In this document: piece after piece, positions 7,850 to 61,589 of the stretch
Position numbering within the stretch: position 1 is the first letter of the stretch
Layout of the letters: every line of letters begins with the position of its first letter
Virus record (IMG/VR): IMGVR_UViG_3300032334_002567
Location: 186,001-250,000 of that record
Direction: 5' to 3' (one strand)
DNA: 64,000 nt
The notes under the pieces: generated by a model
The model's database searches: none
Told to the model about the DNA's origin: nothing
The model's input: only the letters and a program-made list of their open reading frames with translations
Program-made: the position numbers and the translations under genes

Positions 7850-7923
7850 TGGGCCATCTAGGACTTGAACCTAGGACTTCCAAATTATGAGTTTGGCACT
7901 CTAACCAGCTGAGTTAATGGCCC
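7850..7923 (-). tRNA. tRNA-Ile2 (anticodon CAU, lysidine type); no encoded CCA
   Basis: Full cloverleaf GGGCCAT...ATGGCCC-A; anticodon loop CTCATAA; C4-G69 and C5-G68 TilS determinants; directly downstream of tilS. Confidence 0.9.
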
Positions 7924-31230: not shown

Positions 31231-32082
31231 AGTTTCAAATTACGGTAGAAATCTTTAATGAAAAAAAGAACAGAAATGTGACAACTAAAGATTTAAAGCC
31301 TTTTGGCACAATTTCTTTCGTTAAAGGACTAACTAAAGCATTAAAGAAATCAATTAAGGCAAGTTGTTGGCCTTTTGATGCCAAAATTCATGTAAGCGTA
31401 TTAGATAAGCCAAAGCAAAAACAATCATGAAACAAGACAAATACATCACAGATTTTTTAATGTGCTTTTTTATGTTGATATTAGGCATATTGAGATTTTT
31501 GGATGACGATGTTATTGGCCTTACTGTATTTGTTTCATTGGCTTCTTTATTCTTTTTTTCTTCTTATTCATCTTGGTACACAGAAGAGTACGGTTCTCAG
31601 TCCAAAAAGGTGCAAGAGAACAGGACAAAAATTTTTAAATCGCTTTCAACTCCTAGAATAGAAACAAAAATAGAGAGCAACTCCAATATCACTACTTTAA
31701 TTGTCCCCTCTTTAGAGTTCTATAAGGAACAACAGAACAAGCAAAATAAGCTAAAATGATGATTTTTCTTATAGAAGATGAAGGTTTTACTGGAAAGTAC
31801 ATTCTTTTAAAAGAAGAAGGTGATCTTTGTGTTGTTCAAGAACTGAAATTAAGCGGCCAATGTGGAGAGCCTTTCCAGATAAGCAGGTCTCTTTTGGTAG
31901 AGCATAAAGCTTCTTTGCCGTGGCTAGCAGCTTTATCCGTATGGAAACTCACTAATAGTTCAACAAACCAAGAAGAAAAGTACAAAGACAAAGTTGTTAG
32001 TTTATTGGCACAAAAGTATAAAATGTCTTTTGAAGAAATGAATGAACTAATTGATGAGCTAAGAGAAGTAGACATTATCTGA
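31227..32082 (+). CDS. Three small coupled hypothetical genes (31227-31430, 31427-31759 membrane, 31756-32082)
   Basis: Overlapping start/stop codons. Confidence 0.6.
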
Positions 32083-33086
32083 TGATAGATTCTCTGAACA
32101 ATTATTGCGAGATGGGCCTACTTCACAAACAAGCCCATCCAACACTGCCTCTTTTTATTTGGAACTATACGCCAAAAGTTCAATATGAGAGGCTTTGGGA
32201 TTCGATAACTTTAAGTTGTCGAGGTCTAGTTACAGATCATCAAGGCAACGTTGTTGCAAAAAGCTTTGATAAGTTTTTTAACTTAGAAGAGCTTTCTTCT
32301 TTTGAAATTCCTGTGGAGCCTTTTGAGGTCTATGAAAAATTAGATGGTTCTTTGATTATTGTTTTTTGGTATCTAGGGCAGATCGTTGTTGCTTCAAGAG
32401 GCTCTTTTGATAGCGATCATGCCTTAGAAGCAAAAAGCATACTTGATGCATATGATCTTGATAAACTCGATAAATCCAAGATTTATTGTGGAGAACTAAT
32501 TGTACCTTGGAACAGAATTGTAGTCGGCTATGGAAACAAAAGATCTGTTGTTTTTCTAGCAAAGTTTGATACTGCTGGCAATGAATATCCAATAGACGAT
32601 TACAAGCAATATGGTTTTGAAGTAGTTAAAAAATTAGATCTATCAAACTTAGATCTATCTAAATTAAAACAACAAATAAGAGATGATGAAGAAGGCTATG
32701 TTATCAAGTTTAAGTCAGGTAAAAGATTAAAAATAAAAGGACAAGAATATATCAGATTACATAAGATAGTAACAGGAATTTCTAGTGTAGTTATATGGGA
32801 AAACATGATGAGTAATATCCCTATTGATGCTATTCTGGAAGAACTTCCAGATGAATTTTATAACTGGGCAAAAGACGTTCAAAGAAATCTTCAAGACAGA
32901 TACAACTTGATTCTTGAAGAGTCAACTAAAGTTTATCGTGAGTTCGAAACTAGAAAAGAGACTGCTCTTTATTTTCTTGAACAAAAATACCCTCAAGTTC
33001 TTTTTTCTATTCTAAATAAAAAAGACCCTAGCAAGTTAATATGGAAGTTAATTAGACCTGAGTACAAGACACCCTTTGGTGAATAA
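32082..33086 (+). CDS. T4 Rnl1-like RNA ligase
   Basis: CRGLV, KFFNL, YEKLDGS (motif I), SRGSF, EGYVI, LKIK. Confidence 0.88.
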   Translation: MIDSLNNYCEMGLLHKQAHPTLPLFIWNYTPKVQYERLWDSITLSCRGLVTDHQGNVVAKSFDKFFNLEELSSFEIPVEPFEVYEKLDGSLIIVFWYLGQIVVASRGSFDSDHALEAKSILDAYDLDKLDKSKIYCGELIVPWNRIVVGYGNKRSVVFLAKFDTAGNEYPIDDYKQYGFEVVKKLDLSNLDLSKLKQQIRDDEEGYVIKFKSGKRLKIKGQEYIRLHKIVTGISSVVIWENMMSNIPIDAILEELPDEFYNWAKDVQRNLQDRYNLILEESTKVYREFETRKETALYFLEQKYPQVLFSILNKKDPSKLIWKLIRPEYKTPFGE

Positions 33087-33916: not shown

Positions 33917-34557
33917 ATATAAATATAAATCCATTTTATTGTTATGTAAAAAAAGAACACTTGTTTGGATATGATGAAAAAAGTGAAGGCTTTGAGAGTG
34001 TTCTTGTATTTGCTGCAAGAAGCGTACCAGCTAGAGCCCTTCTTTTTCACATAATGACAGAGGGTGGTGCACAAAGAGCTAATGTTCCAATATCAGCCTT
34101 AGTTCATAAAAAGGATGCAGTAAGTATACCACTAGATTATCTACAGCTATGGGATTGTTTTGGAAAAGAAATTAATGTTGTTGTTTTTGACTACTTAGTT
34201 AACAAAAGGTGTCAGGTTGTATTAAAGGACAAAACAGTTAATTGGGGAACCTATATGATGACATTTGACTGGGCGAACAACACGTACTCAGACACACCAC
34301 AAGACTATAAGAATGCACATCTAATAAAGCTTGATAATGGTTGTTTCGCTCTTCAGCCAAATAATAGAATATTTTGGAGGGATTCTAATTTTATTACTAA
34401 ACCCATAAATATTGGCGACGTACCTAAATATAAAGTGGATAATAAGATCTTCGTTTGCGAGGTATCAGATCGCTGGACTTCCCAAGATACGGATTGTTTT
34501 TATTACGATGTTATGGAAGAAAATGAACTTCAAAAAGTGGATGACAGAACAACCTGA
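33913..34557 (+). CDS. Conserved phage hypothetical protein
   Basis: LQLWDCF, YMMTFDW, LDNGCFALQPNNRI. Confidence 0.7.
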   Translation: MNININPFYCYVKKEHLFGYDEKSEGFESVLVFAARSVPARALLFHIMTEGGAQRANVPISALVHKKDAVSIPLDYLQLWDCFGKEINVVVFDYLVNKRCQVVLKDKTVNWGTYMMTFDWANNTYSDTPQDYKNAHLIKLDNGCFALQPNNRIFWRDSNFITKPINIGDVPKYKVDNKIFVCEVSDRWTSQDTDCFYYDVMEENELQKVDDRTT

Positions 34558-34879
34558 AGCAGACTATATTGGGAAAGTAGCAATATTTTATATTCCCGAG
34601 AATAAGTTAACAAAATCTGTTAGAAAAGAACTTCATGATTTTTTTGTTAAAAACTATAACGCATATACACACGAAGTAAGTAAGATACAAGGTTATTGGG
34701 TCAAGCAAAACAAACTAATTAAAGACAAACACGAAAGATATGAAGTTGCTTTTGACGGAGAGCAAAATCTTAAGAAATTTGTCGGTTTTTTGTCTAAATT
34801 GTGCGATACCATAGAGGAAGATTCTATTTATTTAATTGTTGGTGATGAGTCTTATCTGGTAAGACCTAAGAAAAATTAA
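34523..34879 (+). CDS. Hypothetical protein with leader MNFKKWMTE
   Basis: Start re-set to 34523. Confidence 0.6.
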   Translation: MNFKKWMTEQPEADYIGKVAIFYIPENKLTKSVRKELHDFFVKNYNAYTHEVSKIQGYWVKQNKLIKDKHERYEVAFDGEQNLKKFVGFLSKLCDTIEEDSIYLIVGDESYLVRPKKN

Positions 34880-34896
34880 ATTTAAACTATATTAGA

Positions 34897-35184
34897 ATGG
34901 AGGATAAAATGGCAATATTCCAGAAAATTAAAGATTGGTTTGAGAAGGTCTGTTACCCATGTTGTGAAGGCAATGAGTGCAAATGTAATACCGCACAAAA
35001 TTCTTTACCAGCACCAGAAGTTGTAGCAGATAATGTGGTTGATACCGTAGAAGAAACGCCAACACAAGCTGTGGAAGCACCAATTAAATTAGAACCTGTT
35101 AAAAATCCAAAGAAGGCTGCCGGTGCCCATAAAAAGAAACATGCCAAAAAGCCTCCAAAGCCCTCAAAGAGAAAAAAGAAGTAA
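34897..35184 (+). CDS. Hypothetical protein with basic C-terminal tail
   Basis: GGAGG RBS. Confidence 0.6.
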   Translation: MEDKMAIFQKIKDWFEKVCYPCCEGNECKCNTAQNSLPAPEVVADNVVDTVEETPTQAVEAPIKLEPVKNPKKAAGAHKKKHAKKPPKPSKRKKK

Positions 35185-35185
35185 T

Positions 35186-35443
35186 TTACTTATTTTCTTG
35201 TCTTTTGATTCTTTCGTGGTGTTGGTAAGTCATTTGACCATGATCTACTTCATCCTCATCGGCTTTTGGACCCAGCTTTTGTAAAGCATCTGCCGCAATT
35301 GGTGTAAAGTACCCAGCGGAGTAATGGCTCCTCATATACCCATCAGGATAGGCCCAGTGAGATATGCCTGCTCGTGCGGCTTTTTCAGATATTACTGGTA
35401 GCTCTTTTTTATTATCTGTGCAAAATTCTATAAATGTTTTCAA
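35186..35443 (-). CDS. Small protein with leader MKTFIEF
   Basis: AAGGA RBS; TAAATA upstream. Confidence 0.65.
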   Translation of the reverse strand: MKTFIEFCTDNKKELPVISEKAARAGISHWAYPDGYMRSHYSAGYFTPIAADALQKLGPKADEDEVDHGQMTYQHHERIKRQENK

Positions 35444-35493
35444 TTTTCTTCCTTTAAATGCTTTTTTTGTACTAGTTTAAAGCATACTTATTT

Positions 35494-35812
35494 ATGGAGC
35501 TAACAATGAATTTTAAAGATGTTATATTTTCGGACAATACCGCAGTGCCTCAAAGTCTGACAGTAACGAATGTTTCAGCATTTAATGTCTCTGATGAACT
35601 TAATATGTGCTCAATTTTGGATGTGATAAATAAAAAATTTGTTGATGGAACATACTTAGAAATAGTCTCTATGAATTCTTAGGAGGTCTATGCAGTGTTT
35701 TTTTCAAGTTTGCTTGTGTGTAATTGCTGCTTCTTTTTCTCTAGTTGTATTCTCCGCCTCTGTTGGCTTCGCAACCGCAGTTTATCGTTTTATTTTTAAA
35801 ATAGAAGAATAG
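35494..35812 (+). CDS. Two small ORFs (35494-35682; 35690-35812, hydrophobic 40 aa)
   Basis: AGGAGG RBS before the second; manual translation. Confidence 0.45.
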
Positions 35813-35813
35813 A

Positions 35814-36431
35814 ATGAACTTTTTTGAAATATTTGATAAAGCTTATTGTATCAATTTGGACAAAAGAAAAGATAGACTACTCAATTTCGAACTACAGGTT
35901 AAAAAGTATAATTTGGGGCCATATGCGAGGTTTAGAGCCTTTGATGGCTTTAAGATGCCCACAAACCTTGATAAAGGAAATGCAGGCCTAATTAAGTCCG
36001 TAATCGCTGTATTAAAAGAATGTTTAGATGAAGGTACCAGCAAGGTACTTATTTTAGAAGATGATTGTGAGTTTAAAGAAGATATTATAAATATATACGA
36101 ATATTTTAAATATGTACCCTCTGATTGGGACATGGTCTATTTTGGTGGAAATCACAATATCCATATTGGAAAGGAACCACCAAAAAGAATAAACGAAAAA
36201 ATAGCTAAACTACATTACACTTTCACTACTCATTGTATTGCAATAAAAAGGCATATGTTTGAGCCTATAATTCAAAAAATAGGTAATTATGAATCGCCAA
36301 TTGATGTTGCTTACCAACAGTTTCAACAAACACACAACGTATATGGATTTTATCCTTCTCTTGTAAAACAAGCCTCTGGATTTAGTGACATAAGGGGCCA
36401 GCATGTTGACTATGACTGGTTGATTACGTAA
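35814..36431 (+). CDS. Glycosyltransferase family 25-like
   Basis: CINLDKRKDR, LILEDD, DWDMVYFG. Confidence 0.85.
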   Translation: MNFFEIFDKAYCINLDKRKDRLLNFELQVKKYNLGPYARFRAFDGFKMPTNLDKGNAGLIKSVIAVLKECLDEGTSKVLILEDDCEFKEDIINIYEYFKYVPSDWDMVYFGGNHNIHIGKEPPKRINEKIAKLHYTFTTHCIAIKRHMFEPIIQKIGNYESPIDVAYQQFQQTHNVYGFYPSLVKQASGFSDIRGQHVDYDWLIT

Positions 36432-36911
36432 TTAGTCTGAAAAGACGGCACACCAATAAAGCCTGCCCTCTTTGTCTTCTTCTACACCGAATCCAACCCT
36501 CTTATAGCTTGTCCCTAGTATATTCCATCTATGCATTGGAGACCACATCCAAGCTTCAACAACCAACTTTTCTGTTTCTTGTCCCCAAGCAATGTTCTCT
36601 CCAACTAAACTCGAATCTTCATTAACCTTAATAAGGTCTGACATGCTTGAATGATACAAAGAATTCTTTTTAACCATTTTTTGTGCGTGTTTTTGTGCAT
36701 ATTCGCACAGTTTTTTGTCAAGTGTTAATGGTTTTAGTTTTCTAGAGGTTCTTTCTCGGTTATGAGCAACCAGAAGTTTTTCTTTTGTGCTAATAATTGG
36801 AGCACTGATTTCATCTGGTATCTGGGGCGTAGATTTTTGGGGCACTTCTTTTTTTTGGGAGCTGCATCCAATTAGAACAAAAAATGCGATTAAAATAATG
36901 ATTGTTTTCAT
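36432..36911 (-). CDS. CAP/SCP-domain lipoprotein
   Basis: Lipobox LIGC; HNRER, GENIA, WMWSPMHRWNIL. Confidence 0.88.
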   Translation of the reverse strand: MKTIIILIAFFVLIGCSSQKKEVPQKSTPQIPDEISAPIISTKEKLLVAHNRERTSRKLKPLTLDKKLCEYAQKHAQKMVKKNSLYHSSMSDLIKVNEDSSLVGENIAWGQETEKLVVEAWMWSPMHRWNILGTSYKRVGFGVEEDKEGRLYWCAVFSD

Positions 36912-36945
36912 ATTGTATTTATTAATGTGCTAAATATATATATTT

Positions 36946-37107
36946 ATGAAAACTTTTAATCAGTGGCTTCAAGAAATGGTGGGGTCAAATTCGATAACGA
37001 CTTGCAAGGACAGAAAAAATCCAAATTTTCAAATTTGGGGAGCTATGTCTGACTTGGGCTGCAAGCCGGAAAAGAAAATTCCAACAATGAAATTCAATAA
37101 AAAATGA
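36946..37107 (+). CDS. Small protein with leader MKTFNQWLQE (53 aa; missing from the ORF track)
   Basis: Manual translation; TATATATAT just upstream; ATGA overlap with the PLA2 gene. Confidence 0.65.
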   Translation: MKTFNQWLQEMVGSNSITTCKDRKNPNFQIWGAMSDLGCKPEKKIPTMKFNKK

Positions 37108-37595
37108 AACTAAAATTTACAGAGTGGCTAAAATTAGAAGAAATCGATACTCGTAATCTTAAAGATTACATGAAGACTAAGTTTGATCTAAACATAGACG
37201 AATTACCTCTTAACCCTATGGACTACGCTAGTAGAGCTGAAACGGAACCAGAGGGTCAAGGATTAGACACTCAAGCACCTTGGTACAGATACGGAAACTA
37301 TTGCGGACCAGGACCGGCATTAGCTAGTTCATGTAATAAACTTGCAACAGGAGATAAGCTTCCTCCTGCGAAGAACAGTGTTGACAGTCAATGTAAGAAT
37401 CATGATGTTGATTACTGTAAATGTGGAGTAGATTGGAAGGCTGGATTGCCGGGTGGTGGCACACCTTGTTCAAAAGAAGCCGATAAAGATTTTGTTTCAG
37501 GCCTTCAAAGATTAAGAAAAAAGATAAATCCAGAAGAAAGAAGGATAGCGGATATTATTAGGACTTATTTTACTTGGAAGAAAATATTCGGTTAG
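37104..37595 (+). CDS. Phospholipase A2-like protein with head-targeting-like leader
   Basis: YGNYCGPG Ca2+ loop; DSQCKNHDVDY catalytic His-Asp; downstream ADKDF. Confidence 0.8.
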   Translation: MKLKFTEWLKLEEIDTRNLKDYMKTKFDLNIDELPLNPMDYASRAETEPEGQGLDTQAPWYRYGNYCGPGPALASSCNKLATGDKLPPAKNSVDSQCKNHDVDYCKCGVDWKAGLPGGGTPCSKEADKDFVSGLQRLRKKINPEERRIADIIRTYFTWKKIFG

Positions 37596-39088
37596 TGATT
37601 TCTATTTTCTACTTGAGCTAGTTGTTGTCCAACAATTGGTGTTCTTGTTTGCTTTCTTAACATCTCAGGAACAAATGGTACATCGTACTTCTTAAGTACC
37701 TCTTTAAGGTTATTCGCATAAGGTGCTAAACTTGGACTTTGTAGGTCGTTATTTTTGATTGCCTTTATCACATTATCGATGTTCTGCTTGGTTGGCGGGA
37801 AGTTCAATTCTAAGTCGCCGGAATCTGTTTTCTTAATTAAGTGTTCATTGCTAAAACCTTCTGCGTTTCTAAAAAAGGAACCATCTTTATTTAAAAGCAA
37901 TACTTTATTATTATAGTAATAAGTTGCGGGGTCATGTTTAACCATAATTCCTTCATAAAGTTGAGACTGATTTCCATACCATTTTACCACAACTATTGTA
38001 TTGATTAGCTTGCTTAAAAAAGATTGAATTTTTCTTTTAAATTCCTTTTCTTTACGTATTTTCTTTAGTCCTATTACAGTGTCTCTTTGTGTTTGTAATA
38101 TGGACATCAAAGCTTCTTTTTTATAAGAACTCGGCAGTGTTTTTATTATTTCTCGGATGTAACTTCGGGTTAGATACAAATTAGGAGAAACCCTTAAAAA
38201 ATCAGCGGGTCTCAAATAATCTGTGTAGAATCTCTGATACATTAAGCTCATTGCAGGATCGGCTGCAGAGAAATTAAAGCCATTTACTTTTGACCCAGAT
38301 TTTTCTTCTTCTTGATTCATTTTCGCCACAGAAGCCAATAAATGATTGTATATTTCTAAAGCGGTTTTTGTGTCGTTATTTTTTGTAAGGCTGTAGCCGT
38401 TTGGTCCTTCAAAATATATTTCATAAACATTTTTTAATTGCTTGCCTTGAAAGTTTATGCTTGATGGTTCGATACCTACTTTGTATTCGTTGCCTTTTAT
38501 TTCAAACTTTGCTTCATAGCCTCCATGGCTGTCTGGTGGGTTTTCTTCTTCATGAGAAATTCTACGTTCTTCCTGTTCTGATTCGTGGTCACTCATTTTT
38601 TCTTGTACACAGGCGTCTATTGCTTCATCTCGGGCTTTTCTTATAGCTTCTTCCATTTCTTCTCTTCTTTCATCCATTTTATCTCGCCAATCTTGTAGAG
38701 CACTATCATATTCAGACTGAGCACTTTCTAGTTCTTCTTCCCAATTAGCAACTGCCTCTTCATGTTCCTCATCTGATGACGAGTCTTCTCTTTCTGGTTT
38801 GGGGTTTTCTTTTTCCCATTCCTCTCCATTTATGTGTTCAAAGTCTGGGTCTTCATCTGGCTCATCATATATGGGTTCGTCATAAACATCTTCATAACTA
38901 ATGTCATCACCCGCATCCATACAATCTTCATAAGCACTATCATGATCAAATTCTTCTCCTTCGAATTCTTCTGATTCACCAGGTCTTTTTTTTAGTTTGA
39001 TTTTGTCGAGTGGTAATTGAGAGGCACTACGCAAACCTTCCCAGAATATTTCGCCGTTATTACTTAGCCATTCACTGAAGTTGAACAT
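37592..39088 (-). CDS. Paralog-family protein with leader MFNFSEWL and a long acidic insert
   Basis: D/E-rich N-terminal third; shared FEGPNG...IYNHLLASV...GFNF...YL.P domain. Confidence 0.75.
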   Translation of the reverse strand: MFNFSEWLSNNGEIFWEGLRSASQLPLDKIKLKKRPGESEEFEGEEFDHDSAYEDCMDAGDDISYEDVYDEPIYDEPDEDPDFEHINGEEWEKENPKPEREDSSSDEEHEEAVANWEEELESAQSEYDSALQDWRDKMDERREEMEEAIRKARDEAIDACVQEKMSDHESEQEERRISHEEENPPDSHGGYEAKFEIKGNEYKVGIEPSSINFQGKQLKNVYEIYFEGPNGYSLTKNNDTKTALEIYNHLLASVAKMNQEEEKSGSKVNGFNFSAADPAMSLMYQRFYTDYLRPADFLRVSPNLYLTRSYIREIIKTLPSSYKKEALMSILQTQRDTVIGLKKIRKEKEFKRKIQSFLSKLINTIVVVKWYGNQSQLYEGIMVKHDPATYYYNNKVLLLNKDGSFFRNAEGFSNEHLIKKTDSGDLELNFPPTKQNIDNVIKAIKNNDLQSPSLAPYANNLKEVLKKYDVPFVPEMLRKQTRTPIVGQQLAQVENRNH

Positions 39089-39091
39089 AAT

Positions 39092-39403
39092 TTATTCCTC
39101 TACAAAAAAAGCTTTCTCCCACCAGTCATCGTTTATCTGTTGGAAGCCCGCAGCCAAATATTCAGCAGTTTTGTCTTTGCTAACAAATTTCGCATGACCT
39201 GCACCGTCATAAGCAAGGTACATTGAAGTATTTGGAATTCTTGCAATAAAATTGGATCCCTGATTCATTACCTTCCCAGATTGATTTATCGTGGGTGGAG
39301 ATTTCTCAAACTGCATATCAACTGCAGCTACAATTTGATCTTTAATTTTCACCGGATGCGGCAAAGTGAAGCTTGCCATTTCTATAAATTGTTTAAATTC
39401 CAT
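39092..39403 (-). CDS. Small protein with leader MEFKQFIE
   Basis: TATATA 4 nt before the ATG. Confidence 0.65.
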   Translation of the reverse strand: MEFKQFIEMASFTLPHPVKIKDQIVAAVDMQFEKSPPTINQSGKVMNQGSNFIARIPNTSMYLAYDGAGHAKFVSKDKTAEYLAAGFQQINDDWWEKAFFVEE

Positions 39404-39442
39404 AATTTATATATTAACAATAGAAAAAAAATGGGGGTATGA

Positions 39443-40176
39443 TTGTTTACTTTAGCATTATTGGCAATTTTTATCTTTATTTTAGCTATACTTATAGGCC
39501 CAATTGTTTTCTTGGTTCATAAGGTAGACTTTGTCCCAAACTACATAAAATTTACTATTTCTTTTGTTTCAATTTGTTGCTGTGCTTATATGATAGCGGT
39601 AGTGCCAGTTCCTATATTGCAACTATTCTTTTTAATTTCTATAGGCTTTATCTTAGCTGCAAGGGGCAAACCTCACATAAAATAGTGCAGATGTATTGCG
39701 TAAACCAAGCAAAGAAAAAAGTGCCCCATCATGCAAAGAACCAAGAATTTGCATGTATTTGCCATTGGGCTAGTGTACTCTAGTTGCTTTACTATTTGAT
39801 GTACACGAATCTTGTCAAGCTTATTTTGACATATTAAATAGTTGAGCTGAACATCTGTGCAATCACCACTAACGTATCTTTTTGCAAGGTTGTATTCTAT
39901 ATCTGTATTTTCCATTTTAGGCCTCAAAATATTGTAGTATTGAATGCCTAAATATATCAAAATGGAGGAAGAATGGAAATATTAACTAATTTTTGGCTTT
40001 GGCTAGCTGTATTCATTGTTTCCGGTGGCTACATTCTTTATATCAAAAAGAAAGAAAGAGAAAACGTACAGGCACAGTTTGTTATTACCGGTACGTTGCT
40101 TATTGTGTTTTATGCGGTATGCTTTTGTTCAGGAATATGCACTATTTTAAATTTTATTCGCAACTGGTTTTTTTAA
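39443..40176. CDS. Three small membrane-protein ORFs (39443-39685 +, 39673-39960 -, 39973-40176 +)
   Basis: Hydrophobic segments. Confidence 0.5.
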
Positions 40177-40184
40177 GGTAAAAT

Positions 40185-41420
40185 ATGAATTTTAAACAAT
40201 GGCTCCTTACAGAAGAGCGTCAATCAATGGGTGCATCTATCCCCATGCCAGATGAAGTACAAATTCTATCCAATCTGTTTAGTAGTTTTGGAGCTAAATT
40301 GTATGCTGTTGGTGGAGCTATAAGAGACTACTTATACCATATATTCCACGATAGACATATTCCTTACAACCCCAAAGACGTAGATTTAACCACAGATCAA
40401 CCACCAGATCAAGTTACAAGAATACTTAGCTCTCCAGCAGCAGTTCAGCATGGGATTAGGGTCTTACCTAAGGGAGAAAGCTTTGGAGTTATCAGTGCTA
40501 TTATAAATGGCAAAGAATTTGAGATCGCAACCTTCCGAACAGAAGTCTATGATGCTGCCACGGGTGATGGCAGAAGACCAGATAGTGTTCAATACAGTAC
40601 AGCCGCTGAAGACGCCAAGCGTAGAGACCTTCACATAAACGCATTGTTCTATGATCTTCATAGCAAAGAAATACATGATTACAATGTAGATGAGAATGGA
40701 GAGGGAGAAGGATTTAAGGACATTAGGAACAAAAAAGTTAGAGTTGTAGGAGATCCTTTTGAGAGATTTAGAGAAGATAAGCTTAGAGTTTTAAGGCTTG
40801 TCAGATTCTTTTGTAGGTTTAATGAGGACGTGATAACCAGTCACTTAGATTCAAGAACATTATCTGCCGTAGATAACTTCAAGGATTTGAAGGGAGTTAG
40901 TGGCGAAAGAATAGCAAATGAATTTATTTCTGGACTTAAGACTTGTAAGAGTACAAAAAACTACATTTTAAGCTTCAAGTCTTTGGGGTTGATACCAACA
41001 ATATTTCCCGGCTTAAATGTTAATACTTCTGAAATGGATGCTATGGACTCTTCAAGAAACTCAATAGCAGTCACTGCTTTTTTACTCAGAGACAATGATA
41101 TAAAAGTTATTAAATCTAAGCTAAATTCACTCAAGTACTCTAACGAATTTATAAACACACTTTCTTTGGTGCTCATGGCAGCTTACAAATTAGATAAGTC
41201 TAATTTTATTCGTTTGTTAAGAATGAGAGATAATCTAAATGATAGCTTAAAAAGTTCGCTTGTTGAATTCGGTAAAATAAGTGGTCTGGAAAGAGAAATG
41301 AGTCATTTTGTACATTACACTCAAGTCACAAAATCAGAAGACTATATGCATCTACAGAATGAAAAAAGAGGAGAGAAGATGAGTGAAGATGAATACGAAA
41401 ATTATAAGGAAAATTCATGA
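40185..41420 (+). CDS. cca: Class II tRNA nucleotidyltransferase (CCA-adding enzyme) with leader MNFKQWLLTEE
   Basis: VGGAIRD, DVD, EIATFR.E, RRDLHINAL, FREDKLRVLR; poly(A) polymerase GRRF signature absent. Confidence 0.88.
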   Translation: MNFKQWLLTEERQSMGASIPMPDEVQILSNLFSSFGAKLYAVGGAIRDYLYHIFHDRHIPYNPKDVDLTTDQPPDQVTRILSSPAAVQHGIRVLPKGESFGVISAIINGKEFEIATFRTEVYDAATGDGRRPDSVQYSTAAEDAKRRDLHINALFYDLHSKEIHDYNVDENGEGEGFKDIRNKKVRVVGDPFERFREDKLRVLRLVRFFCRFNEDVITSHLDSRTLSAVDNFKDLKGVSGERIANEFISGLKTCKSTKNYILSFKSLGLIPTIFPGLNVNTSEMDAMDSSRNSIAVTAFLLRDNDIKVIKSKLNSLKYSNEFINTLSLVLMAAYKLDKSNFIRLLRMRDNLNDSLKSSLVEFGKISGLEREMSHFVHYTQVTKSEDYMHLQNEKRGEKMSEDEYENYKENS

Positions 41421-41908
41421 ACTCTTTCATTTCTTGGCTAGAAAATAGAGATAGAAAAGAACTCATACTAATGAGAGGTGTTTCATCATCGGGTAAAAGC
41501 ACTGTAGCTAAAAGTTTGGTTGGCGGTGGAAAGATATTCTCTACAGATGACTTTTTCATGCAGGGAAATAGGTATGTTTTTGACCCAAAAAATATTGGTA
41601 CAAACCACAAACTAAACCAGAGCAGAACAGAAGAAGCTATGAAACAGGGTATTAGTCCAATTATAATAGATAATACTAATACTGAGTCTTGGGAGATGAA
41701 ACCTTACGTTTTATTGGCCGATAATTATGGATACTCAATAAAAATAGTAGAACTACCACCTTTAGACATAGAAGAGTTGATGAGACGACAAGAGAGTAGA
41801 AGATCTTTTAATAAGGCTTTGCCTAGAAAGTCCTTGGAGCGGGCGATAGAGCGCTATCAACACAATGTAAGTGTAGACGATATTCGAAATAGTTCGCCTC
41901 CTTTTTAA
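41417..41908 (+). CDS. AAA_33/N4BP2-like P-loop polynucleotide kinase with leader MNSFISWLE
   Basis: RGVSSSGKST, STDDFF, IIDNTN, WEMKPYV; ATGA-coupled to cca. Confidence 0.82.
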   Translation: MNSFISWLENRDRKELILMRGVSSSGKSTVAKSLVGGGKIFSTDDFFMQGNRYVFDPKNIGTNHKLNQSRTEEAMKQGISPIIIDNTNTESWEMKPYVLLADNYGYSIKIVELPPLDIEELMRRQESRRSFNKALPRKSLERAIERYQHNVSVDDIRNSSPPF

Positions 41909-41910
41909 TT

Positions 41911-42498
41911 ATGTGTTTATTTGATGCCTTAATCCTTTTATATTGTTCTCCAATTATACTGCTTTATTTTTTGATGTGCTCAACCATACCTTTCATCAGG
42001 GTAGGAGAAATAAAGAAGGGTAAGGGTGTAGATTTGTTTATTTGCCGGGATATAATCCACTCAGACTTTATTTTTAAATCTAGTCTTTGGAGTGAAGTTT
42101 TTGAGCCAAAAGGCGAATACATTAAAATCGGTTGGGGAGACAGAAAAATATTCTTAGAAACAAAGGTTTGGGCTAATCTAAGAGCCTTTGATGTAATGAC
42201 AGCATTTGTCGGTATCAATAAAACAGTTTTAAGAGTAGAGTTTTTGGACACAGTGCCAGAAGGCTGTGTCAAAATGGAAATAGATGACTGCCAACTAGAA
42301 GTGATTAAAATCCACGTTAACCAATCTTTTAGTGGTAAACCTATAAAGAAGCAAAGTTGGCACTGTGAACGTGGAGACTTTTACGAGTCTAAGTTGAGAT
42401 ACAATTGTATAACAAATTGCAATAACTGGGTTAATCGTGCTCTCTTCGTATGCAGAGCAACCAATAGAGTTTGGTGTCCACTAAGTTTATACTTTTAG
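41911..42498 (+). CDS. DUF2459-like protein
   Basis: IHSD, IGWGDR, TNCNNW. Confidence 0.7.
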   Translation: MCLFDALILLYCSPIILLYFLMCSTIPFIRVGEIKKGKGVDLFICRDIIHSDFIFKSSLWSEVFEPKGEYIKIGWGDRKIFLETKVWANLRAFDVMTAFVGINKTVLRVEFLDTVPEGCVKMEIDDCQLEVIKIHVNQSFSGKPIKKQSWHCERGDFYESKLRYNCITNCNNWVNRALFVCRATNRVWCPLSLYF

Positions 42499-42692
42499 TG
42501 CTTTTTCTTTTTGTGATTTTTCTTTTTATGTTTTTTCTTGAGGCTGTTGCGACTAGCCTTTACATAAACTTGATCCGACCCAGTTTGATTCGCTAGTGGA
42601 GGATGAGTTCCTATACCGCCATATTGGGGTGGGTAAATTCCAACTATTCCTTCTCCAAGTCTGCTTTTTAGAAATTCAAAAAATGTTTTCAT
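42495..42692 (-). CDS. Small basic protein with leader MKTFFEFL
   Basis: LGE after the leader; K/H-rich tail. Confidence 0.65.
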   Translation of the reverse strand: MKTFFEFLKSRLGEGIVGIYPPQYGGIGTHPPLANQTGSDQVYVKASRNSLKKKHKKKNHKKKKH

Positions 42693-43000
42693 TGGTTAAA
42701 TACGTTCTTTCCTGTTGAAGCTTGCATTTTGCTTGTTTCTTCTACTAGCTGTTCAAATAAAGCTAACATTCTGGGATTTCTTGCAACATACCTTAGTAAA
42801 GGAACATATGTGTTTGACTTCTCTCCAATTTTATTTGAAATTCTATTTAGAACTCTTGCAAATGCATTTTTGTCCTCGTGCCCGGTATTTAGCTCGTTAT
42901 CATCAGGGTTAGCAGCGGCCTGTGTTTGTCTATTAGTCATTTGAGGGTTTGCTACAATCGGTTGTGCATTCATATTTTGAACTAATTCATAGAAATTCAT
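42689..43000 (-). CDS. Hypothetical protein starting MNFYELV
   Basis: AAGGA RBS; TATATA at 43027. Confidence 0.6.
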   Translation of the reverse strand: MNFYELVQNMNAQPIVANPQMTNRQTQAAANPDDNELNTGHEDKNAFARVLNRISNKIGEKSNTYVPLLRYVARNPRMLALFEQLVEETSKMQASTGKNVFNQ

Positions 43001-43132
43001 TTTATTCCTTTTCTGTGTGGACAAACTATATATGCTTAAGGGAAAAAATCAAAATGACAGACTTAATGATATTAAATTATTTGGCCTTTTTTGCGTTTGT
43101 TTTAGTTCTATTAACTTGGATACATTTCAACA

Positions 43133-43567
43133 ATGATTAAATTTAGTGTATGGTTAGAAAACAAGATTAAAGCTATTCGAACAGCTAGTGATGCTGAGTT
43201 GGACCAAGTTGTCAAGGGAGCACCTTACACTTCTCCTATGTTAAGAAGAATTAACTATTTAACAAATAATGGGAAACCGTTCGATCCTTCTAGTCCGGTA
43301 AATGATTACTTTCAACATTATGTTGGCGTTAACAAAACAAGATCTAGAAAAGCAAATAAAGATAGAGCCTGGGCTTTAGGGCTGGAAGTGCCAGAAGAAG
43401 ATAGAGAAATAATTCGGGTCGGGGGCATTGAAAAACCCAGCAGTGCGGTTCCTTATCTTAAACCAGATCACATAAAAACAATTACTAGGCTGGGTGCAGG
43501 AAAGCAAAAGCCCAGAGATGCACAAAGATTTGTAGGTACTTACAAAAGATTATTTGGCGAAAGATGA
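43133..43567 (+). CDS. Hypothetical protein with leader MIKFSVWLE
   Basis: Coupled to the next gene. Confidence 0.65.
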   Translation: MIKFSVWLENKIKAIRTASDAELDQVVKGAPYTSPMLRRINYLTNNGKPFDPSSPVNDYFQHYVGVNKTRSRKANKDRAWALGLEVPEEDREIIRVGGIEKPSSAVPYLKPDHIKTITRLGAGKQKPRDAQRFVGTYKRLFGER

Positions 43568-44280
43568 AAACATTCAAACAATACCTAGAAGATCGTCAAA
43601 TAATGATTTTTTCTACTAGACCGGTAGAGTTATATCATGGTTCAAACACTGGAGCCGATAATAGTGCTTTAAATAGCTTGTTAAAAGATGGCATTAAACC
43701 AACAGTAGCTCAAGGACATGGCCAAGGATCAGGTTTTTATGTATGGTCAGATAAAAACAGTGCCATCAACCACACTAAAGCCATAACCTCAGGCTCTATT
43801 ACAACTAATGCTAAGACAGACGGTCTTCCAATGATAGTAACAGTCGAAGCCATAGCAGACCCAGAAAAATGGGATTTAGATTATGAATCTAATAAACGAT
43901 CAATCGTTAATTGGCTACATGATAATTTTGAAAAACTTCAACCGCTATTGAAACCAGAAGACAAAGTTCAACTAAGGTCTAAACAGAATAGAGAAATCGT
44001 AAACAATAGAGATGAAAAAATAATGTCAAAGGGTGTAAGTGTTTCTTTAGAGACTTACAAAACACTATATGCTCAGAGTGAACCTAATATTCGGGACGGA
44101 GAGGTTATAGCACCAATTATAAATAAGCTACAACAAAAAGACCCTCAAACTGTACATAAATTCGAAGAACTATTTTTTGCCAACATGAAGCCAGGGGTTG
44201 CAATAAAGTATGTTGGCAGTGAAATATTAAGACCCAAAAGAATAGAGATATTTAAAGATGGTCAATGGGTTCAAGCTTAA
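43564..44280 (+). CDS. ADP-ribosyltransferase-like (H-Y clade) protein with leader MKTFKQYLE
   Basis: LYHGS...SLLKDGI...GSGFYV...A pattern of PARP/diphtheria-toxin-type ARTs. Confidence 0.6.
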   Translation: MKTFKQYLEDRQIMIFSTRPVELYHGSNTGADNSALNSLLKDGIKPTVAQGHGQGSGFYVWSDKNSAINHTKAITSGSITTNAKTDGLPMIVTVEAIADPEKWDLDYESNKRSIVNWLHDNFEKLQPLLKPEDKVQLRSKQNREIVNNRDEKIMSKGVSVSLETYKTLYAQSEPNIRDGEVIAPIINKLQQKDPQTVHKFEELFFANMKPGVAIKYVGSEILRPKRIEIFKDGQWVQA

Positions 44281-44636
44281 TTAGGGAATCTATTTCTGAT
44301 GTGGTCAACGTCTTTCATTATATCAGTGTTACACCTAGTCCAGTTTTTAAGGTGCCCGAAAAATAGATGACAATTAAAGCTTTCGCTTTCACAAAGAGAA
44401 ATTAGATTTTCTGGGTCAAGTTCTCTGTCAGGATCTAGATGAACTGGGACTATATGATGTGGCACAACATTCTTGTCGCTTCCGCATATCGCACATCTTG
44501 GATTATTTTCTAGATGTGCAAGTCTAACTTTTCTCCATTTTGAAGATCTTGGATATGCTAGAACCTGCACCTCATCTACAGAAAGGCTCTGTATCTGATC
44601 CCGAAAACAAAATAATTTTTTTAAGAACTCTATCAA
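44277..44636 (-). CDS. HNH endonuclease
   Basis: CAICG...PHHIVP...NLISLC...CH. Confidence 0.85.
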   Translation of the reverse strand: MIEFLKKLFCFRDQIQSLSVDEVQVLAYPRSSKWRKVRLAHLENNPRCAICGSDKNVVPHHIVPVHLDPDRELDPENLISLCESESFNCHLFFGHLKNWTRCNTDIMKDVDHIRNRFPN

Positions 44637-44648
44637 ATGAAACTTTCC

Positions 44649-45032
44649 TTATTCTGGTTTTGAAGAGTAGTGATTTCCACTTCTTGTCATTCTTGACCAT
44701 GAAGAGAAATCAGAAGATCTTAGCTTGCTACCTTTTTCAGCTAATCCAATAGCTTTACTAACTGCTTCTTTTATTTTGGATTCTTCTTTTAATCCATATT
44801 CTAAAGTTCTTTTAATTTCAAGAAAGACTTTTAGCAACTCACTATTTAATTCTACAAAGTTTGCTATTCTTTCGTCTTTTTCATCTATCATGTCTGCGAT
44901 TTGACGCAAATGATGTGTATGAGAAACCTCTGATTTGAGTGTGCCCGCTGGAGGAGTGCGTGGAAGGCCAATATCCCCGGTCGGCGGTACATTTTCGGAT
45001 GATGATTCTAAAAATTGCTCAAAACTTTTCAT
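44649..45032 (-). CDS. Hypothetical protein with leader MKSFEQFLE
   Basis: AGGAG RBS; TATATA at 45058. Confidence 0.7.
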   Translation of the reverse strand: MKSFEQFLESSSENVPPTGDIGLPRTPPAGTLKSEVSHTHHLRQIADMIDEKDERIANFVELNSELLKVFLEIKRTLEYGLKEESKIKEAVSKAIGLAEKGSKLRSSDFSSWSRMTRSGNHYSSKPE

Positions 45033-45585: not shown

Positions 45586-46197
45586 ATGGGCAAAGTTACA
45601 TTAATTGGCGACTTGCACGGCAAATATAAAAGATATCACGAAATAATTCGTGAGAAGGATCGCTTTCCATACACCGTACAGTTGGGCGATTTTGGTTTTG
45701 ATTATGAAACTCTTAAAAACGTTGATTCAAAAAATCATGTTTTCGTTGGAGGTAACCACGACAACTACGAAAAGGTTAAAACCGTCCCCAATTATCTTGG
45801 TGATTTCGGACACATGGTCAACTTTAACGGTTTAGACTTTTTCTATTATCGTGGAGCTTACAGTATCGACAGACAGTATCGCACTATAGGAATTGATTGG
45901 TGGGCAGAAGAACAAGTGAGCGTTGAAGGCTTTATGGAAGCTAGAGAACTTTATCGTGGGATAAAGCCTAGAATTATGCTTACTCATGATTGCCCCGAAA
46001 AAATAGCATATCTGATGTTGGAGCCCGGATGTAGAATATACCAAAATATGACGGGCTGGGCGTTACAAGAATTGCTCAATATTCACGAGCCAGAATACTG
46101 GATTTTTGGTCACTACCATCAATCTAAAACTATTAAGCATGGTAACACCACATTTATTTGCCTTGATGAACTAGAAACTTATGATATAATTGCATAA
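45586..46197 (+). CDS. Calcineurin-like metallophosphoesterase
   Basis: GDLHG, LGDFG, GNHD, THDCP, FGHYH. Confidence 0.92.
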   Translation: MGKVTLIGDLHGKYKRYHEIIREKDRFPYTVQLGDFGFDYETLKNVDSKNHVFVGGNHDNYEKVKTVPNYLGDFGHMVNFNGLDFFYYRGAYSIDRQYRTIGIDWWAEEQVSVEGFMEARELYRGIKPRIMLTHDCPEKIAYLMLEPGCRIYQNMTGWALQELLNIHEPEYWIFGHYHQSKTIKHGNTTFICLDELETYDIIA

Positions 46198-58481: not shown

Positions 58482-58551
58482 GCTTTTCCTAATATTTTCT
58501 ATTATTTTGTAATATTTTATATACACTTTCTCTTATACATTTAGGTGTAAT

Positions 58552-61245: not shown

Positions 61246-61318
61246 GCGAGTGTAGCTCAGTTGGTAGAGCATTTGATTTCCAATCAAAATGTCGCCGGAT
61301 CGTACCCGGTCACTCGCT
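61246..61318 (+). tRNA. tRNA-Gly (UCC); no encoded CCA
   Basis: Cloverleaf GCGAGTG...CACTCGC-T; anticodon loop TTTCCAA; U73 discriminator; atypical T-loop ATCGTAC. Confidence 0.9.
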
Positions 61319-61589
61319 CTTTTCTTTAAATTTTGTCCAATAACCTTTACCGTTTACAAAATTTTATAAGAGAATTTTAATCTTTATTCGCTCTCATCTT
61401 TAAAAGGCTTAAATCCAACCCTTTTCATATTTTCGTATTCTTCTATATTCTTCCAGACTTCTCTTACTGGCTGGGACATTATTATTGCAATCAATAAGAA
61501 CAATAGTGCCAAAACACAAAATTGCATAGTTTATCTCCTGTGAAAAGTGACGTAAATTATCAAATACAATTGGAAAAATCAATCCTGAA

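What the first reader, a model, noticed from the sequence alone, without database searches (positions are those of the whole stretch)
40185..41908. CCA-adding enzyme plus N4BP2-like kinase, both carrying the head leader: possible injected tRNA-repair kit
Seen: two translationally coupled RNA end-processing genes, each with its own leader. The window also holds an Rnl1-like ligase (32082), a metallophosphoesterase (45586) and two tRNAs lacking CCA. Known: T4 Pnk/Rnl1 repair PrrC-cut tRNA, and some host defences attack tRNA 3' ends or anticodons. Inference: pre-made end-healing enzymes could be delivered at infection, before translation is possible. The ligase and phosphoesterase lack the leader and would be supplied from early genes. 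The CCA enzyme may instead simply mature the phage tRNAs.
Basis: partly seen in the sequence, partly recalled or inferred. Interest (0 to 1): 0.82.

Follow-up and report, generated by a model that had tools for sequence, protein, structure and literature searches.

The report
Capsid-targeting tags on two tRNA-repair enzymes
A huge freshwater phage encodes a tRNA CCA-adding enzyme and an RNA/DNA 5'-kinase that each begin with the short peptide phage T4 uses to load proteins into its head, so these repair enzymes are probably shipped inside the virus particle and delivered with the DNA, though nobody has measured this.

Summary
ORF 40185-41420 is a class II tRNA nucleotidyltransferase. All catalytic motifs are present, and its best sequence and fold matches are true CCA-adding enzymes. 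ORF 41417-41908 is a stand-alone polynucleotide-kinase-type P-loop kinase. The two overlap by ATGA, and each starts with a 9-11 residue leader.

The leader is not chance: 16 of 107 window ORFs start with it, against 1 of 311 internal Met positions. It matches the T4 capsid targeting sequence MKTYQEFIAE. It is kept in about 85% of homologues of both enzymes, and natural leaderless variants start just after it.

Relatives that carry leader-tagged members of these families have T4-type head genes (gp23 capsid, gp20 portal, S77/gp21 protease). A conserved prohead-position gene in those modules carries the same leader followed by L-K-E-G.

Packaging and ejection are therefore the best reading, but they are inferred. 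The window's own head genes were not found. No virion or expression data exist. The cca-kinase linkage is evolutionarily shallow. The CCA enzyme may simply mature the phage's CCA-less tRNAs.

The Rnl1-like ligase and the metallophosphoesterase are real and carry no leader. This is a new variant of a known kind.

The parts
39949..39958 (+). AAATATATCA box 14 nt upstream of the first gene of the operon. It is a candidate phage-specific promoter element.
   Evidence: ATATATA-type boxes precede leader genes or the first genes of their operons. They occur before 6 of 16 leader genes and 6 of 91 other genes (Fisher p=0.002). A promoter function is inferred only.
39973..40176 (+). 67-aa small hydrophobic protein, the first gene of the operon. 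It has no leader.
   Evidence: The ORF is listed. It is called as a gene in the 89%-identity relative L010. A similar 67-aa membrane ORF lies next to cca in the 67%-identity relative L004.
40185..40217 (+). Leader of the CCA enzyme, residues 1-11 (MNFKQWLLTEE). It is a T4-CTS-like peptide and contains L-T-E.
   Evidence: The AlphaFold2 (AF2) model has pLDDT 60 over the first 10 residues against 93 overall. The leader is kept in register in 102 of 120 homologues.
40185..41420 (+). Class II tRNA nucleotidyltransferase, probably CCA-adding, 411 aa.
   Evidence: PF01743 matches at E=1.6e-23. The best NCBIfam match is PRK13299 CCA-NTase. The best PDB sequence hits are human TRNT1 and bacterial CCA enzymes. 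Motifs GGxxRD, DxD, RRD, EDxxR and ER are invariant in 49 homologues. The full-length fold matches CCA enzymes ahead of E. coli PAP.
41417..41443 (+). Leader of the kinase, residues 1-9 (MNSFISWLE), immediately before strand beta-1 and the P-loop.
   Evidence: AF2 pLDDT is 56 over the first 10 residues against 92 overall. Six natural homologues start directly at LILMRG.
41417..41908 (+). Stand-alone polynucleotide-kinase-type P-loop kinase (AAA_33, N4BP2-like), 163 aa. It is translationally coupled to cca through an ATGA overlap at 41417-41420.
   Evidence: PF13671 matches at E=1.3e-16. There are weak Pnkp and Pnkp1 hits. The invariant residues are the P-loop, S-T-D-D-F and R124. The top Foldseek hits are C. 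thermocellum Pnkp kinase, T4 Pnk, mammalian PNKP and PSTK, at TM about 0.7.
41911..42498 (+). DUF2459/TIGR02117-family protein, the third enzyme-size gene of the operon. It has no leader and its role is unknown.
   Evidence: It stays next to the kinase in the 89%-identity relatives.
34523..45032 (.). Cluster of 12 leader-bearing genes on both strands. It resembles the polymorphic internal-protein loci of T-even phages. The starts are at 34523+, 35443-, 36946+, 37104+, 39088-, 39403-, 40185+, 41417+, 42692-, 43133+, 43564+ and 45032-.
   Evidence: Most have no Pfam or PHROG match. ORF 37104-37595 hits a PLA2-like domain.
32082..33086 (+). Rnl1-like RNA ligase without a leader.
   Evidence: PF09511 matches at E=3.9e-16 and TIGR02308 at 1.9e-14. 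The N-terminus is MIDSLNNY.
45586..46197 (+). Calcineurin-type metallophosphoesterase without a leader. It is a candidate 3'-end healing phosphatase.
   Evidence: PF00149 matches at E=5.6e-10. Kinase homologues in cultured phages sit next to a phosphoesterase or Rnl1.
7850..7923 (-). tRNA-Met (CAT) without an encoded CCA.
61246..61319 (+). tRNA-Gly (TCC) without an encoded CCA.

Best explanation
The region is an operon: a small membrane protein, cca, a kinase and a DUF2459 protein. The first enzyme is a class II CCA-adding tRNA nucleotidyltransferase. The second is a stand-alone polynucleotide 5'-kinase of the T4 Pnk / bacterial Pnkp type.

Each enzyme carries an N-terminal peptide of about 10 residues with the consensus M-K-T-F-K-E-W-L-E-N. 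This is the same signal as the T4 capsid targeting sequence (CTS, MKTYQEFIAE).

In T4 this peptide docks otherwise unrelated internal proteins onto the scaffolding core of the prohead, and the gp21 protease clips it off after a Glu. The cargo then stays in the head and is ejected with the DNA.

The most likely mechanism here follows that model. Both enzymes are made during head assembly, loaded into proheads through the leader, and trimmed by an S77-type prohead protease. They then enter the next host cell ready-made. There they can rebuild tRNA 3' ends and phosphorylate 5'-OH RNA ends before any phage protein can be translated. The untagged Rnl1-like ligase and metallophosphoesterase would complete healing and sealing once they are expressed.

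Shown: the gene structure, the enzyme families and their catalytic motifs, the statistical reality of the leader and its conservation, its match to the T4 CTS, and T4-type head genes in related leader-bearing phages.

Inferred: loading into heads, cleavage, ejection, timing, and any role against tRNA-targeting defences.
For: Enzymes:
- CCA: PF01743, CCA-type best hits by sequence and by fold over all four domains, and motifs A-E invariant.
- Kinase: AAA_33, invariant P-loop, catalytic Asp and lid Arg, and polynucleotide kinases as the top structural matches.

Reality of the leader:
- 16 of 107 ORF starts against 1 of 311 internal Met positions, p=2e-9.
- 102 of 120 CCA homologues (43-94% identity, on contigs up to 600 kb) keep it in register.
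- Most kinase homologues keep it.
- Leaderless natural variants begin just after it, at MEEKF... for CCA and LILMRG for the kinase, so it is a separable module.
- It is a low-confidence N-terminal helix in both AF2 models.

Match to the T4 CTS:
- The CTS was read from T4 ipII and ipIII and is cited in PMC8442874.
- It scores 21.0 bits on a position-specific scoring matrix (PSSM) built from leaders of other phages. Only 4 of 1323 Met positions in the window reach that score.
- It scores +12.1 bits on the six positions my search pattern did not fix. The null is -7.0 +/- 7.5, and 0 of 41 reach it.
- T4 internal proteins share nothing but this leader, which directs packaging (PMC12373910; PMC5694885).

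Head context:
- The kinase homologue P0136 (55% identity, leader MNFKQFLEN) lies inside a head module with Gp23, Peptidase_S77, Portal_T4 and terminase.
- CCA homologues with the leader lie 8 kb from this capsid gene in L040 and L083.
- The complete 595-kb genome LR756511 has this capsid gene at 78% identity. It has the whole module of terminase, portal, S77 protease, scaffold and capsid protein (MCP). It also has a leader-bearing CCA enzyme and a leader-bearing HAD_SAK phosphatase.
- A conserved acidic gene of about 115 aa between portal and protease always carries the leader followed by L-K-E-G. It forms a cluster of 93 members.
- Other leader-tagged proteins near these capsid genes include 2H/Acb1-like, HD, NIF/HAD phosphatase, GNAT, ArdC-N, and C39/C70 peptidases. 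This looks like an effector repertoire.
Against: - The window's own contig (381 kb) was never shown to carry the T4-type head genes. Three protein scans, one DNA scan, one protein search and a walk to contig position 268,110 all missed them.
- There are no virion proteomes, no cultured relative and no RNA data.
- About 15% of window ORFs carry the leader, which is many for head cargo.
- The kinase has W-L-E rather than the T4 [L/I]-x-E site, so cleavage there is uncertain.
- cca and the kinase are adjacent only in relatives of at least 89% identity.
- The ligase and phosphatase needed for a full repair pathway have no leader.
- Both window tRNAs lack CCA, so plain tRNA maturation explains the CCA enzyme without any packaging.
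Confidence: 0.5

Rival explanations
1. These are ordinary intracellular enzymes. The CCA enzyme simply completes the phage's own CCA-less tRNAs. The kinase works in the cytoplasm with the metallophosphoesterase and the Rnl1-like ligase, as T4 Pnk and Rnl1 do. The leader then serves some purpose other than capsid loading, for example co-regulated expression, folding or complex assembly. Alternatively it is an inherited relic with no present function on these two proteins.
For: Both window tRNAs lack an encoded CCA. In cultured phages the kinase homologues sit beside a phosphoesterase and Rnl1 and have no leader, because the alignments start at residues 7-14. CCA and RNA-repair enzymes are already described as cytoplasmic counter-defence in jumbo phages (PMC7824862). 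Leaderless natural variants of both families exist. About 15% of ORFs carry the leader.
Against: The leader is kept at the amino-acid level over 43-94% identity and across genomes of 33-59% GC. It matches the T4 CTS beyond the positions used to find it. It marks a conserved gene inside T4-type head modules.
Confidence: 0.3
2. The leader is an N-terminal degron or recognition tag for the phage-encoded ClpX (with ClpP). It would give timed destruction or unfolding of a set of proteins rather than capsid loading.
For: The window encodes a ClpX (8712-10031; AAA_2, ClpB_D2-small and zf-C4_ClpX). LR756511 encodes a ClpP right beside its leader-tagged CCA and HAD_SAK genes. That ClpX recognises N-terminal motifs is established knowledge, not tested here. 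Iyer et al. suggest that phage ClpX could translocate proteins during assembly.
Against: T4 uses the same peptide without any ClpX. The leader sits on a conserved prohead-position gene and is followed by an L-K-E-G protease-type site. No tool result links ClpX presence to leader presence.
Confidence: 0.08
3. The enzymes are mis-assigned. The nucleotidyltransferase would be a poly(A) polymerase or a partial (CC- or A-adding) enzyme. The kinase would phosphorylate a small molecule or a signalling nucleotide rather than RNA ends.
For: The NCBIfam scores for CCA-NTase (131 bits) and PcnB (117 bits) are close, and both are far below their cut-offs. Some kinase homologues also hit Zeta_toxin and KTI12/PSTK models. 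Other leader-tagged proteins include Acb1-like 2H enzymes that act on nucleotide signals.
Against: Sequence and fold searches both rank true CCA enzymes above E. coli PAP and A-adding enzymes. The flexible-loop region aligns with human TRNT1. The kinase's top 18 structural hits are all polynucleotide kinases. In distant huge phages cca is flanked by 2H-SAK, HAD_SAK and HD RNA-repair domains.
Confidence: 0.1
4. The shared N-termini are a chance resemblance, or a codon-level or translation-initiation artefact of an AT-rich genome.
For: The genome is 36% GC, and MK-rich starts are common in AT-rich genomes.
Against: Enrichment at ORF starts has p=2e-9. The motif includes Trp (TGG). It is conserved in relatives with 50-59% GC.
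Confidence: 0.01

Closest known systems
[quoted passage not shown]
   Same: Both have a roughly 10-residue N-terminal peptide of the pattern M-K-T-aromatic-x-E-aromatic-aliphatic-x-E on otherwise unrelated proteins. Both sets of genes are clustered in variable loci. In related phages the leader occurs alongside gp20/gp21/gp22/gp23-type head genes. An acidic residue follows the hydrophobic core.
   Different: The T4 cargo consists of small basic inhibitors of GmrSD restriction enzymes. Here the cargo would be catalytic RNA-end enzymes of 46 and 19 kDa. The leader is on about 15% of ORFs rather than three. Packaging and cleavage have not been measured.
T4 Pnk plus Rnl1 tRNA healing and sealing against the PrrC anticodon nuclease
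   Same: Both combine a P-loop polynucleotide kinase with a T4-Pnk-like fold, an Rnl1-family ligase and a 3'-end phosphoesterase in one phage.
   Different: T4 Pnk is a kinase-phosphatase fusion made early in the cell and is not packaged. Here the kinase stands alone and is leader-tagged, the phosphatase is a separate calcineurin-type enzyme 4 kb away, and the ligase is 8 kb away.
Bacterial Pnkp (C. thermocellum Pnkp/Hen1; Capnocytophaga Pnkp1-Rnl-Hen1)
   Same: These are the best sequence and fold matches of the kinase. Both pair a kinase with a metallophosphoesterase.
   Different: The bacterial proteins are multidomain and act with the Hen1 methyltransferase. No Hen1 was seen here.
CCA-adding enzymes of jumbo phages and of bacteria (Bacillus type; E. 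coli Cca with an HD domain)
   Same: All share class II motifs A-E and the head-neck-body-tail fold. Iyer et al. 2021 already list CCA enzymes among jumbo-phage RNA-repair genes. A relative (L040) fuses an HD domain to the CCA enzyme, as E. coli Cca does.
   Different: This enzyme has an N-terminal CTS-type extension of about 18 residues that cellular and cultured-phage enzymes lack, since their alignments start at residues 19-36.
Ejected enzymes of other phages: N4 and phiKZ virion RNA polymerases, P1 Dar proteins, SPN3US ejection proteins, and polyvalent proteins
   Same: The logic is the same: pre-made enzymes travel with the DNA to act before phage gene expression. In giant phages the prohead protease also cleaves after Glu.
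   Different: These use different targeting mechanisms and different activities. None is a tRNA-end repair enzyme.

Membership tests
T4-type CTS-bearing head cargo | A peptide of about 10 residues at the extreme N-terminus of otherwise unrelated proteins | tested here: met
   16 window ORFs of unrelated sequence start with it. It precedes the first structural element of both enzymes.
T4-type CTS-bearing head cargo | Sequence agreement with MKTYQEFIAE | tested here: met
   The T4 CTS, taken from NC_000866, scores 21.0 bits on the leader PSSM. It scores +12.1 bits on the six unconstrained positions, and 0 of 41 null sites reach that. The two enzymes of the finding have weaker versions; MNSFISWLEN scores 16.7 bits.
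T4-type CTS-bearing head cargo | A prohead-protease site [L/I]-x-E directly after the hydrophobic core | tested here: inconclusive
   The CCA enzyme has L-T-E at residues 8-10. The kinase has only W-L-E. A Glu follows within 2-7 residues in all 16 window leaders. The specificity of this protease is unknown.
T4-type CTS-bearing head cargo | The same genome encodes a gp21/S77 protease, a scaffold, a gp20 portal and a gp23 capsid protein | tested here: inconclusive
   This is met in relatives: L012 and LR756511. It was not found for the window's own contig.
T4-type CTS-bearing head cargo | The protein is present in virions and is ejected with the DNA | not testable with these tools
   There is no cultured relative. 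The nearest INPHARED genome is the metagenomic LR756511.
Class II CCA-adding tRNA nucleotidyltransferase | Motifs A (GGxxRD, DxD), B (RRD), D (EDxxR) and E (ER) | tested here: met
   G43 G44 R47, D65 D67, R146 R147 D148, E197 D198 R201 and E241 R242 are invariant in 49 homologues.
Class II CCA-adding tRNA nucleotidyltransferase | A head-neck-body-tail fold, closer to CCA enzymes than to poly(A) polymerase | tested here: met
   The first 11 Foldseek hits are CCA-adding enzymes, with the top ten at TM 0.58-0.66 over about 360-420 alignment columns. E. coli PAP ranks 12th. The sequence search gives the same order.
Class II CCA-adding tRNA nucleotidyltransferase | Adds exactly C-C-A to tRNA 3' ends | not testable with these tools
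   This needs an enzyme assay. The NCBIfam scores are far below the equivalog cut-offs.
Polynucleotide 5'-kinase (T4 Pnk / Pnkp kinase domain) | A P-loop, a catalytic Asp after strand 2, a lid Arg, and the PNK fold | tested here: met
   GxSxSGKST, S-T-D-D-F and R124 are invariant. The top structural hits are Cth Pnkp, T4 Pnk and PNKP.
Polynucleotide 5'-kinase (T4 Pnk / Pnkp kinase domain) | A fused 3'-phosphatase domain | tested here: not met
   The protein is 163 aa and has the kinase domain only. A separate metallophosphoesterase lies at 45586-46197.
N4BP2 (NEDD4-binding protein 2) | An N-terminal AAA_33 kinase together with C-terminal CUE/Smr domains | tested here: not met
   Only the kinase domain is present. 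The name is a JGI label on a 90%-identical homologue. 'N4BP2-like' is fair for the kinase domain only.
T4-like healing-and-sealing tRNA repair pathway | A kinase, a 3'-end phosphoesterase and an RNA ligase acting together, usually as neighbours | tested here: inconclusive
   All three activities are encoded within 14 kb, but not in one operon. In cultured phages the kinase homologues do neighbour a phosphoesterase or Rnl1.

The most novel reading that the evidence does not exclude
A large, uncultured group of freshwater and soil phages has T4-type heads and genomes up to about 670 kb. This group may use the T4 capsid targeting peptide as a general address label. The label would load dozens of different enzymes into the capsid. 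These would include tRNA 3'-end rebuilders (CCA, HD), RNA-end kinases and phosphatases, Acb1-like 2H phosphodiesterases, ArdC-like domains, acetyltransferases and cysteine proteases. Every infection would then begin with a ready-made counter-defence and translation-repair toolkit. The two genes of this finding would be the first examples of packaged tRNA-repair enzymes.
Probability: 0.4. Interest if true: 0.85.

Novelty: new variant of a known kind. Interest (0 to 1): 0.7.

Why it matters
Defences that cut or trim tRNA shut down translation, so a phage that must first translate its repair enzymes is caught in a trap. Enzymes that arrive with the DNA would escape it.

If the leader works as in T4, its sequence becomes a simple rule for reading candidate ejected proteins out of uncultured huge-phage genomes. 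The rule already picks out recognisable counter-defence domains.

It would also extend the T4 CTS from a curiosity of T-even phages to a widespread cargo system. It would supply natural leaders for loading foreign enzymes into T4-type capsids.

If the leader does something else, it is still a strongly conserved tag of unknown meaning on about 15% of the genes of these phages.

Tried and rejected
- Megablast of the region against 50,697 phage records found nothing.
- The window's own head genes were never found. I tried three capsid-protein scans of IMG/VR with different queries. A protein search returned 3100 capsid clusters, none on a contig of 381,443 bp among the best 120. Two 10-kb steps to the right of the window reached contig position 268,110.
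- Affiliation through other window genes failed. SNF2, a sigma-like ORF and the 760-aa leader protein gave no link to LR756511.
- PHROGs and Pfam were blank for most leader-bearing proteins.
- No RNA sequencing run was listed, so expression timing and transcript starts could not be checked, and read laying was not used.
- The regions upstream of the capsid gene showed no shared ATATATA box, so that box cannot be tied to late genes.
- T4 gp67 and gp68 do not start with the CTS. The conserved leader-bearing head-module gene is therefore an analogue by position and acidity only.
- I rejected a chance motif, a codon artefact, and shared ancestry of the two enzymes.
Full report
WHAT IS THERE

The window is positions 186,001-250,000 of a 381,443-bp viral contig from a freshwater metagenome (IMGVR_UViG_3300032334_002567). 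It has 36% GC and no near relative among deposited phages.

At the given coordinates there are two ORFs on the + strand. ORF 40185-41420 (411 aa) matches the PolyA_pol head domain at E=1.6e-23. ORF 41417-41908 (163 aa) matches AAA_33 at E=1.3e-16. The kinase ATG overlaps the cca stop codon (ATGA), and an AAGGA lies upstream.

A 67-aa hydrophobic ORF (39973-40176) lies 8 nt upstream of cca. A DUF2459 gene (41911-42498) follows the kinase. The side observations also hold:
- An Rnl1-like ligase lies at 32082-33086 and a calcineurin-type phosphoesterase at 45586-46197. Both lack the leader.
- Two tRNAs are present and neither has an encoded CCA.

THE ENZYMES

The first protein ranks true CCA-adding enzymes above poly(A) polymerase and A-adding enzymes in every comparison:
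- NCBIfam gives PRK13299 at 131 bits and PcnB at 117 bits, both far below their cut-offs.
- PDB sequence search gives human TRNT1 at 89 bits, Bacillus CCA at 57 bits and E. coli PAP at 54 bits.
- A confident AF2 model (pLDDT 93) matches CCA enzymes over all four domains ahead of PAP.

Motifs A, B, D and E are invariant in 49 homologues.

The second protein gives a confident model (pLDDT 92). Its first 18 structural matches are polynucleotide kinases: C. thermocellum Pnkp, T4 Pnk and mammalian PNKP. PSTK follows, and Pnkp1 appears lower in the list. The P-loop, the S-T-D-D-F Asp and a lid Arg are invariant.

In cultured Vibrio, Aeromonas and Klebsiella phages, homologues of this kinase sit beside a phosphoesterase or Rnl1. 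'CCA-adding enzyme plus PNK-type (N4BP2-like) kinase' is therefore a fair description. The activities themselves remain untested.

THE LEADER IS REAL

The motif M-x(1-3)-F-x-x-[WFY]-[LI] starts 16 of 107 non-overlapping ORFs in the window. It occurs at only 1 of 311 internal Met positions (p=2e-9). Twelve of the starts lie on both strands between 34.5 and 45 kb.

Among 120 CCA homologues (43-94% identity, many on contigs of 100-600 kb), 102 keep the leader at a fixed distance from the first conserved helix. About 15 start just after it, for example MEEKF.... An 89%-identity relative has an 11-residue insertion exactly at the leader-enzyme junction.

Most kinase homologues keep the leader as well. 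Six start directly at strand beta-1, and five have about 100 extra residues between the leader and the kinase domain.

In both models the first ten residues form a low-confidence helix, with pLDDT 56 and 60. The leader is therefore a separable module under selection at the protein level. It is kept in genomes from 33 to 59% GC.

WHAT THE LEADER IS

T4 internal proteins share only an N-terminal leader, MKTYQEFIAE. This leader docks them on the scaffolding core and is removed by gp21 after Glu (PMC8442874; PMC12373910; PMC5694885). I read it directly from T4 ipII and ipIII.

I took leaders from 76 unrelated protein clusters in other phages. The clusters give the consensus M-K-T-F-K-E-W-L-E-N-x-E. 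The PSSM was built from the 40 of them in the canonical M-x-x-F register. On that PSSM:
- The T4 peptide scores 21.0 bits, a value reached by only 4 of 1323 Met positions in the window.
- On the six positions my search pattern did not fix, it scores +12.1 bits. The null is -7.0 +/- 7.5, and 0 of 41 reach it.

Window leaders such as MKTFKQYLED, MKTFFEFLKS and MKSFEQFLES are near-copies of the T4 peptide. Those of the two enzymes are somewhat weaker.

THE HEAD CONTEXT

A kinase homologue (55% identity, leader MNFKQFLEN) lies inside a head module with Gp23, Peptidase_S77 (the gp21 family), an intein-bearing Portal_T4 and a terminase. The gene order is T4's 20...21-22-23.

This capsid protein is at least 78% identical across about 400 IMG/VR contigs, more than 3000 protein clusters, and contigs up to 670 kb.

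Between portal and protease there is always an acidic gene of about 115 aa. It carries the leader followed by L-K-E-G, and it forms the largest leader cluster, with 93 members.

CCA homologues with the leader lie 8 kb from the capsid gene in L040 and L083. There a leader-HD domain and a leader-CCA enzyme form one 727-aa ORF.

The curated 595-kb genome LR756511 has this capsid protein at 78% identity. It also has the full module of terminase, portal, S77 protease, scaffold and MCP. About 57 kb away it has a small cluster of leader genes that includes its CCA enzyme and a HAD_SAK phosphatase.

Leader-tagged proteins near these capsid genes hit the following families: 2_5_RNA_ligase2/Acb1, PolyA_pol, AAA_33, NIF phosphatase, GNAT, UvrD, ArdC-N, and C39/C70 peptidases. 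In two other huge phages (LR745206 and LR756502), cca carries a leader-like start and is flanked by 2H-SAK and CoaE-like genes.

MOST LIKELY MECHANISM

The two enzymes are head cargo. They are loaded through a T4-type CTS, trimmed by an S77-type protease, and ejected with the DNA. On arrival they rebuild tRNA 3' ends and phosphorylate 5'-OH ends before phage translation starts. The untagged ligase and phosphoesterase are made later.

I put this at about 0.5. The enzyme families and the CTS identity are well supported. Loading, cleavage, ejection and any anti-defence role are inferred.

WEAKNESSES

- The window's own head genes were not found, despite seven attempts.
- There is no proteome, no cultured relative and no RNA run.
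- The kinase lacks a canonical [L/I]-x-E site.
- About 15% of ORFs carry the tag.
- cca and the kinase are neighbours only in relatives of at least 89% identity, not at 67%.
- A 5'-kinase and a CCA adder mend different lesions, so 'kit' overstates their unity.
- The CCA enzyme may simply mature CCA-less phage tRNAs.
- A ClpX-tag reading is not excluded. The window encodes ClpX, and LR756511 encodes ClpP next to its tagged enzymes.

COMPARISON AND NOVELTY

Three things are already known: the T4 CTS and its internal proteins, T4 Pnk/Rnl1 repair, and RNA-repair genes in jumbo phages. My literature searches found no report of CTS-type leaders on RNA-repair enzymes, and none of this leader in huge phages.

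I therefore file the finding as a new variant of a known kind. It is of high but not extreme interest, and the decisive tests are easy to state.

Noticed in passing
window 618-626, 20481-20488, 36934-36944, 39409-39416(-), 43028-43034(-), 45059-45066(-), 58517-58524(-), 61121-61128(-), 39949-39958: An ATATATA(A) box lies 3-37 nt upstream of leader genes that head transcription units, and upstream of the tm67-cca-kinase operon. It precedes 6 of 16 leader genes and 6 of 91 others (p=0.002). In several cases it sits so close to the ATG that the mRNA would be nearly leaderless. It may be a phage-specific promoter, and the window has two sigma-like ORFs.
   Followed up: partly
L040 18493-20676(-) and L083 18414-20594(-): A single 727-aa ORF joins a leader-tagged HD phosphohydrolase to a CCA enzyme that keeps its own internal leader (MNFRQFIESQE). 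This could be a polyprotein cut at the second leader, two products from an internal start, or a recent fusion.
   Followed up: no
window 8712-10031 (+); L003 7723-8331: The phage encodes a ClpX with a zinc finger. The related complete genome LR756511 encodes a ClpP immediately beside its leader-tagged CCA, a HAD_SAK phosphatase and a histidine phosphatase.
   Followed up: partly
window 11511-12389 (+) and 25843-26859 (+): Two ORFs match the phage RNA polymerase sigma-factor family phrog_351 (E=5.7e-15 and 3.5e-4).
   Followed up: no
window 37104-37595 (+): A leader-bearing 163-aa protein hits the parvovirus-type phospholipase A2 domain PF08398, just above its cut-off (25.0 bits against 23.9). 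In parvoviruses that domain is a capsid-borne entry enzyme.
   Followed up: no
window 37592-39088 (-): A leader-bearing 498-aa protein has a long, very acidic N-terminal half (runs of E and D). It has no family match.
   Followed up: no
L012 9000-11534(-) and portals of about 70 related loci: The T4-type portal of this phage group starts with a conserved leader-like MAWWDFFK(I/V)F. The L012 portal also carries an intein (PF14890).
   Followed up: no
loci L012-L189; P0158-P0277: A gp23-type major capsid protein stays at least 78% identical across contigs of 33-59% GC and sizes up to 670 kb, in more than 3000 clusters at 90% identity. The only deposited phage genome with it is the metagenomic LR756511. 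This is a very large group of phages with T4-type heads and no cultured member.
   Followed up: partly
P0142-P0146 (kinase homologues): Five homologues of 261-264 aa have about 100 extra residues inserted between the leader and the kinase domain.
   Followed up: no
window 61590-62009 (-): This 139-aa ORF has homologues (44-48% identity) 2-6 kb downstream of the capsid gene in several T4-type head loci (L039, L032, L103). It is the only window gene, besides cca and the kinase, that was found in those loci.
   Followed up: partly
window 23315-24196 (+) and 44277-44636 (-): HNH endonuclease-like ORFs. One of them lies inside the leader-gene cluster, which is consistent with a recombination-prone, variable locus.
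   Followed up: no
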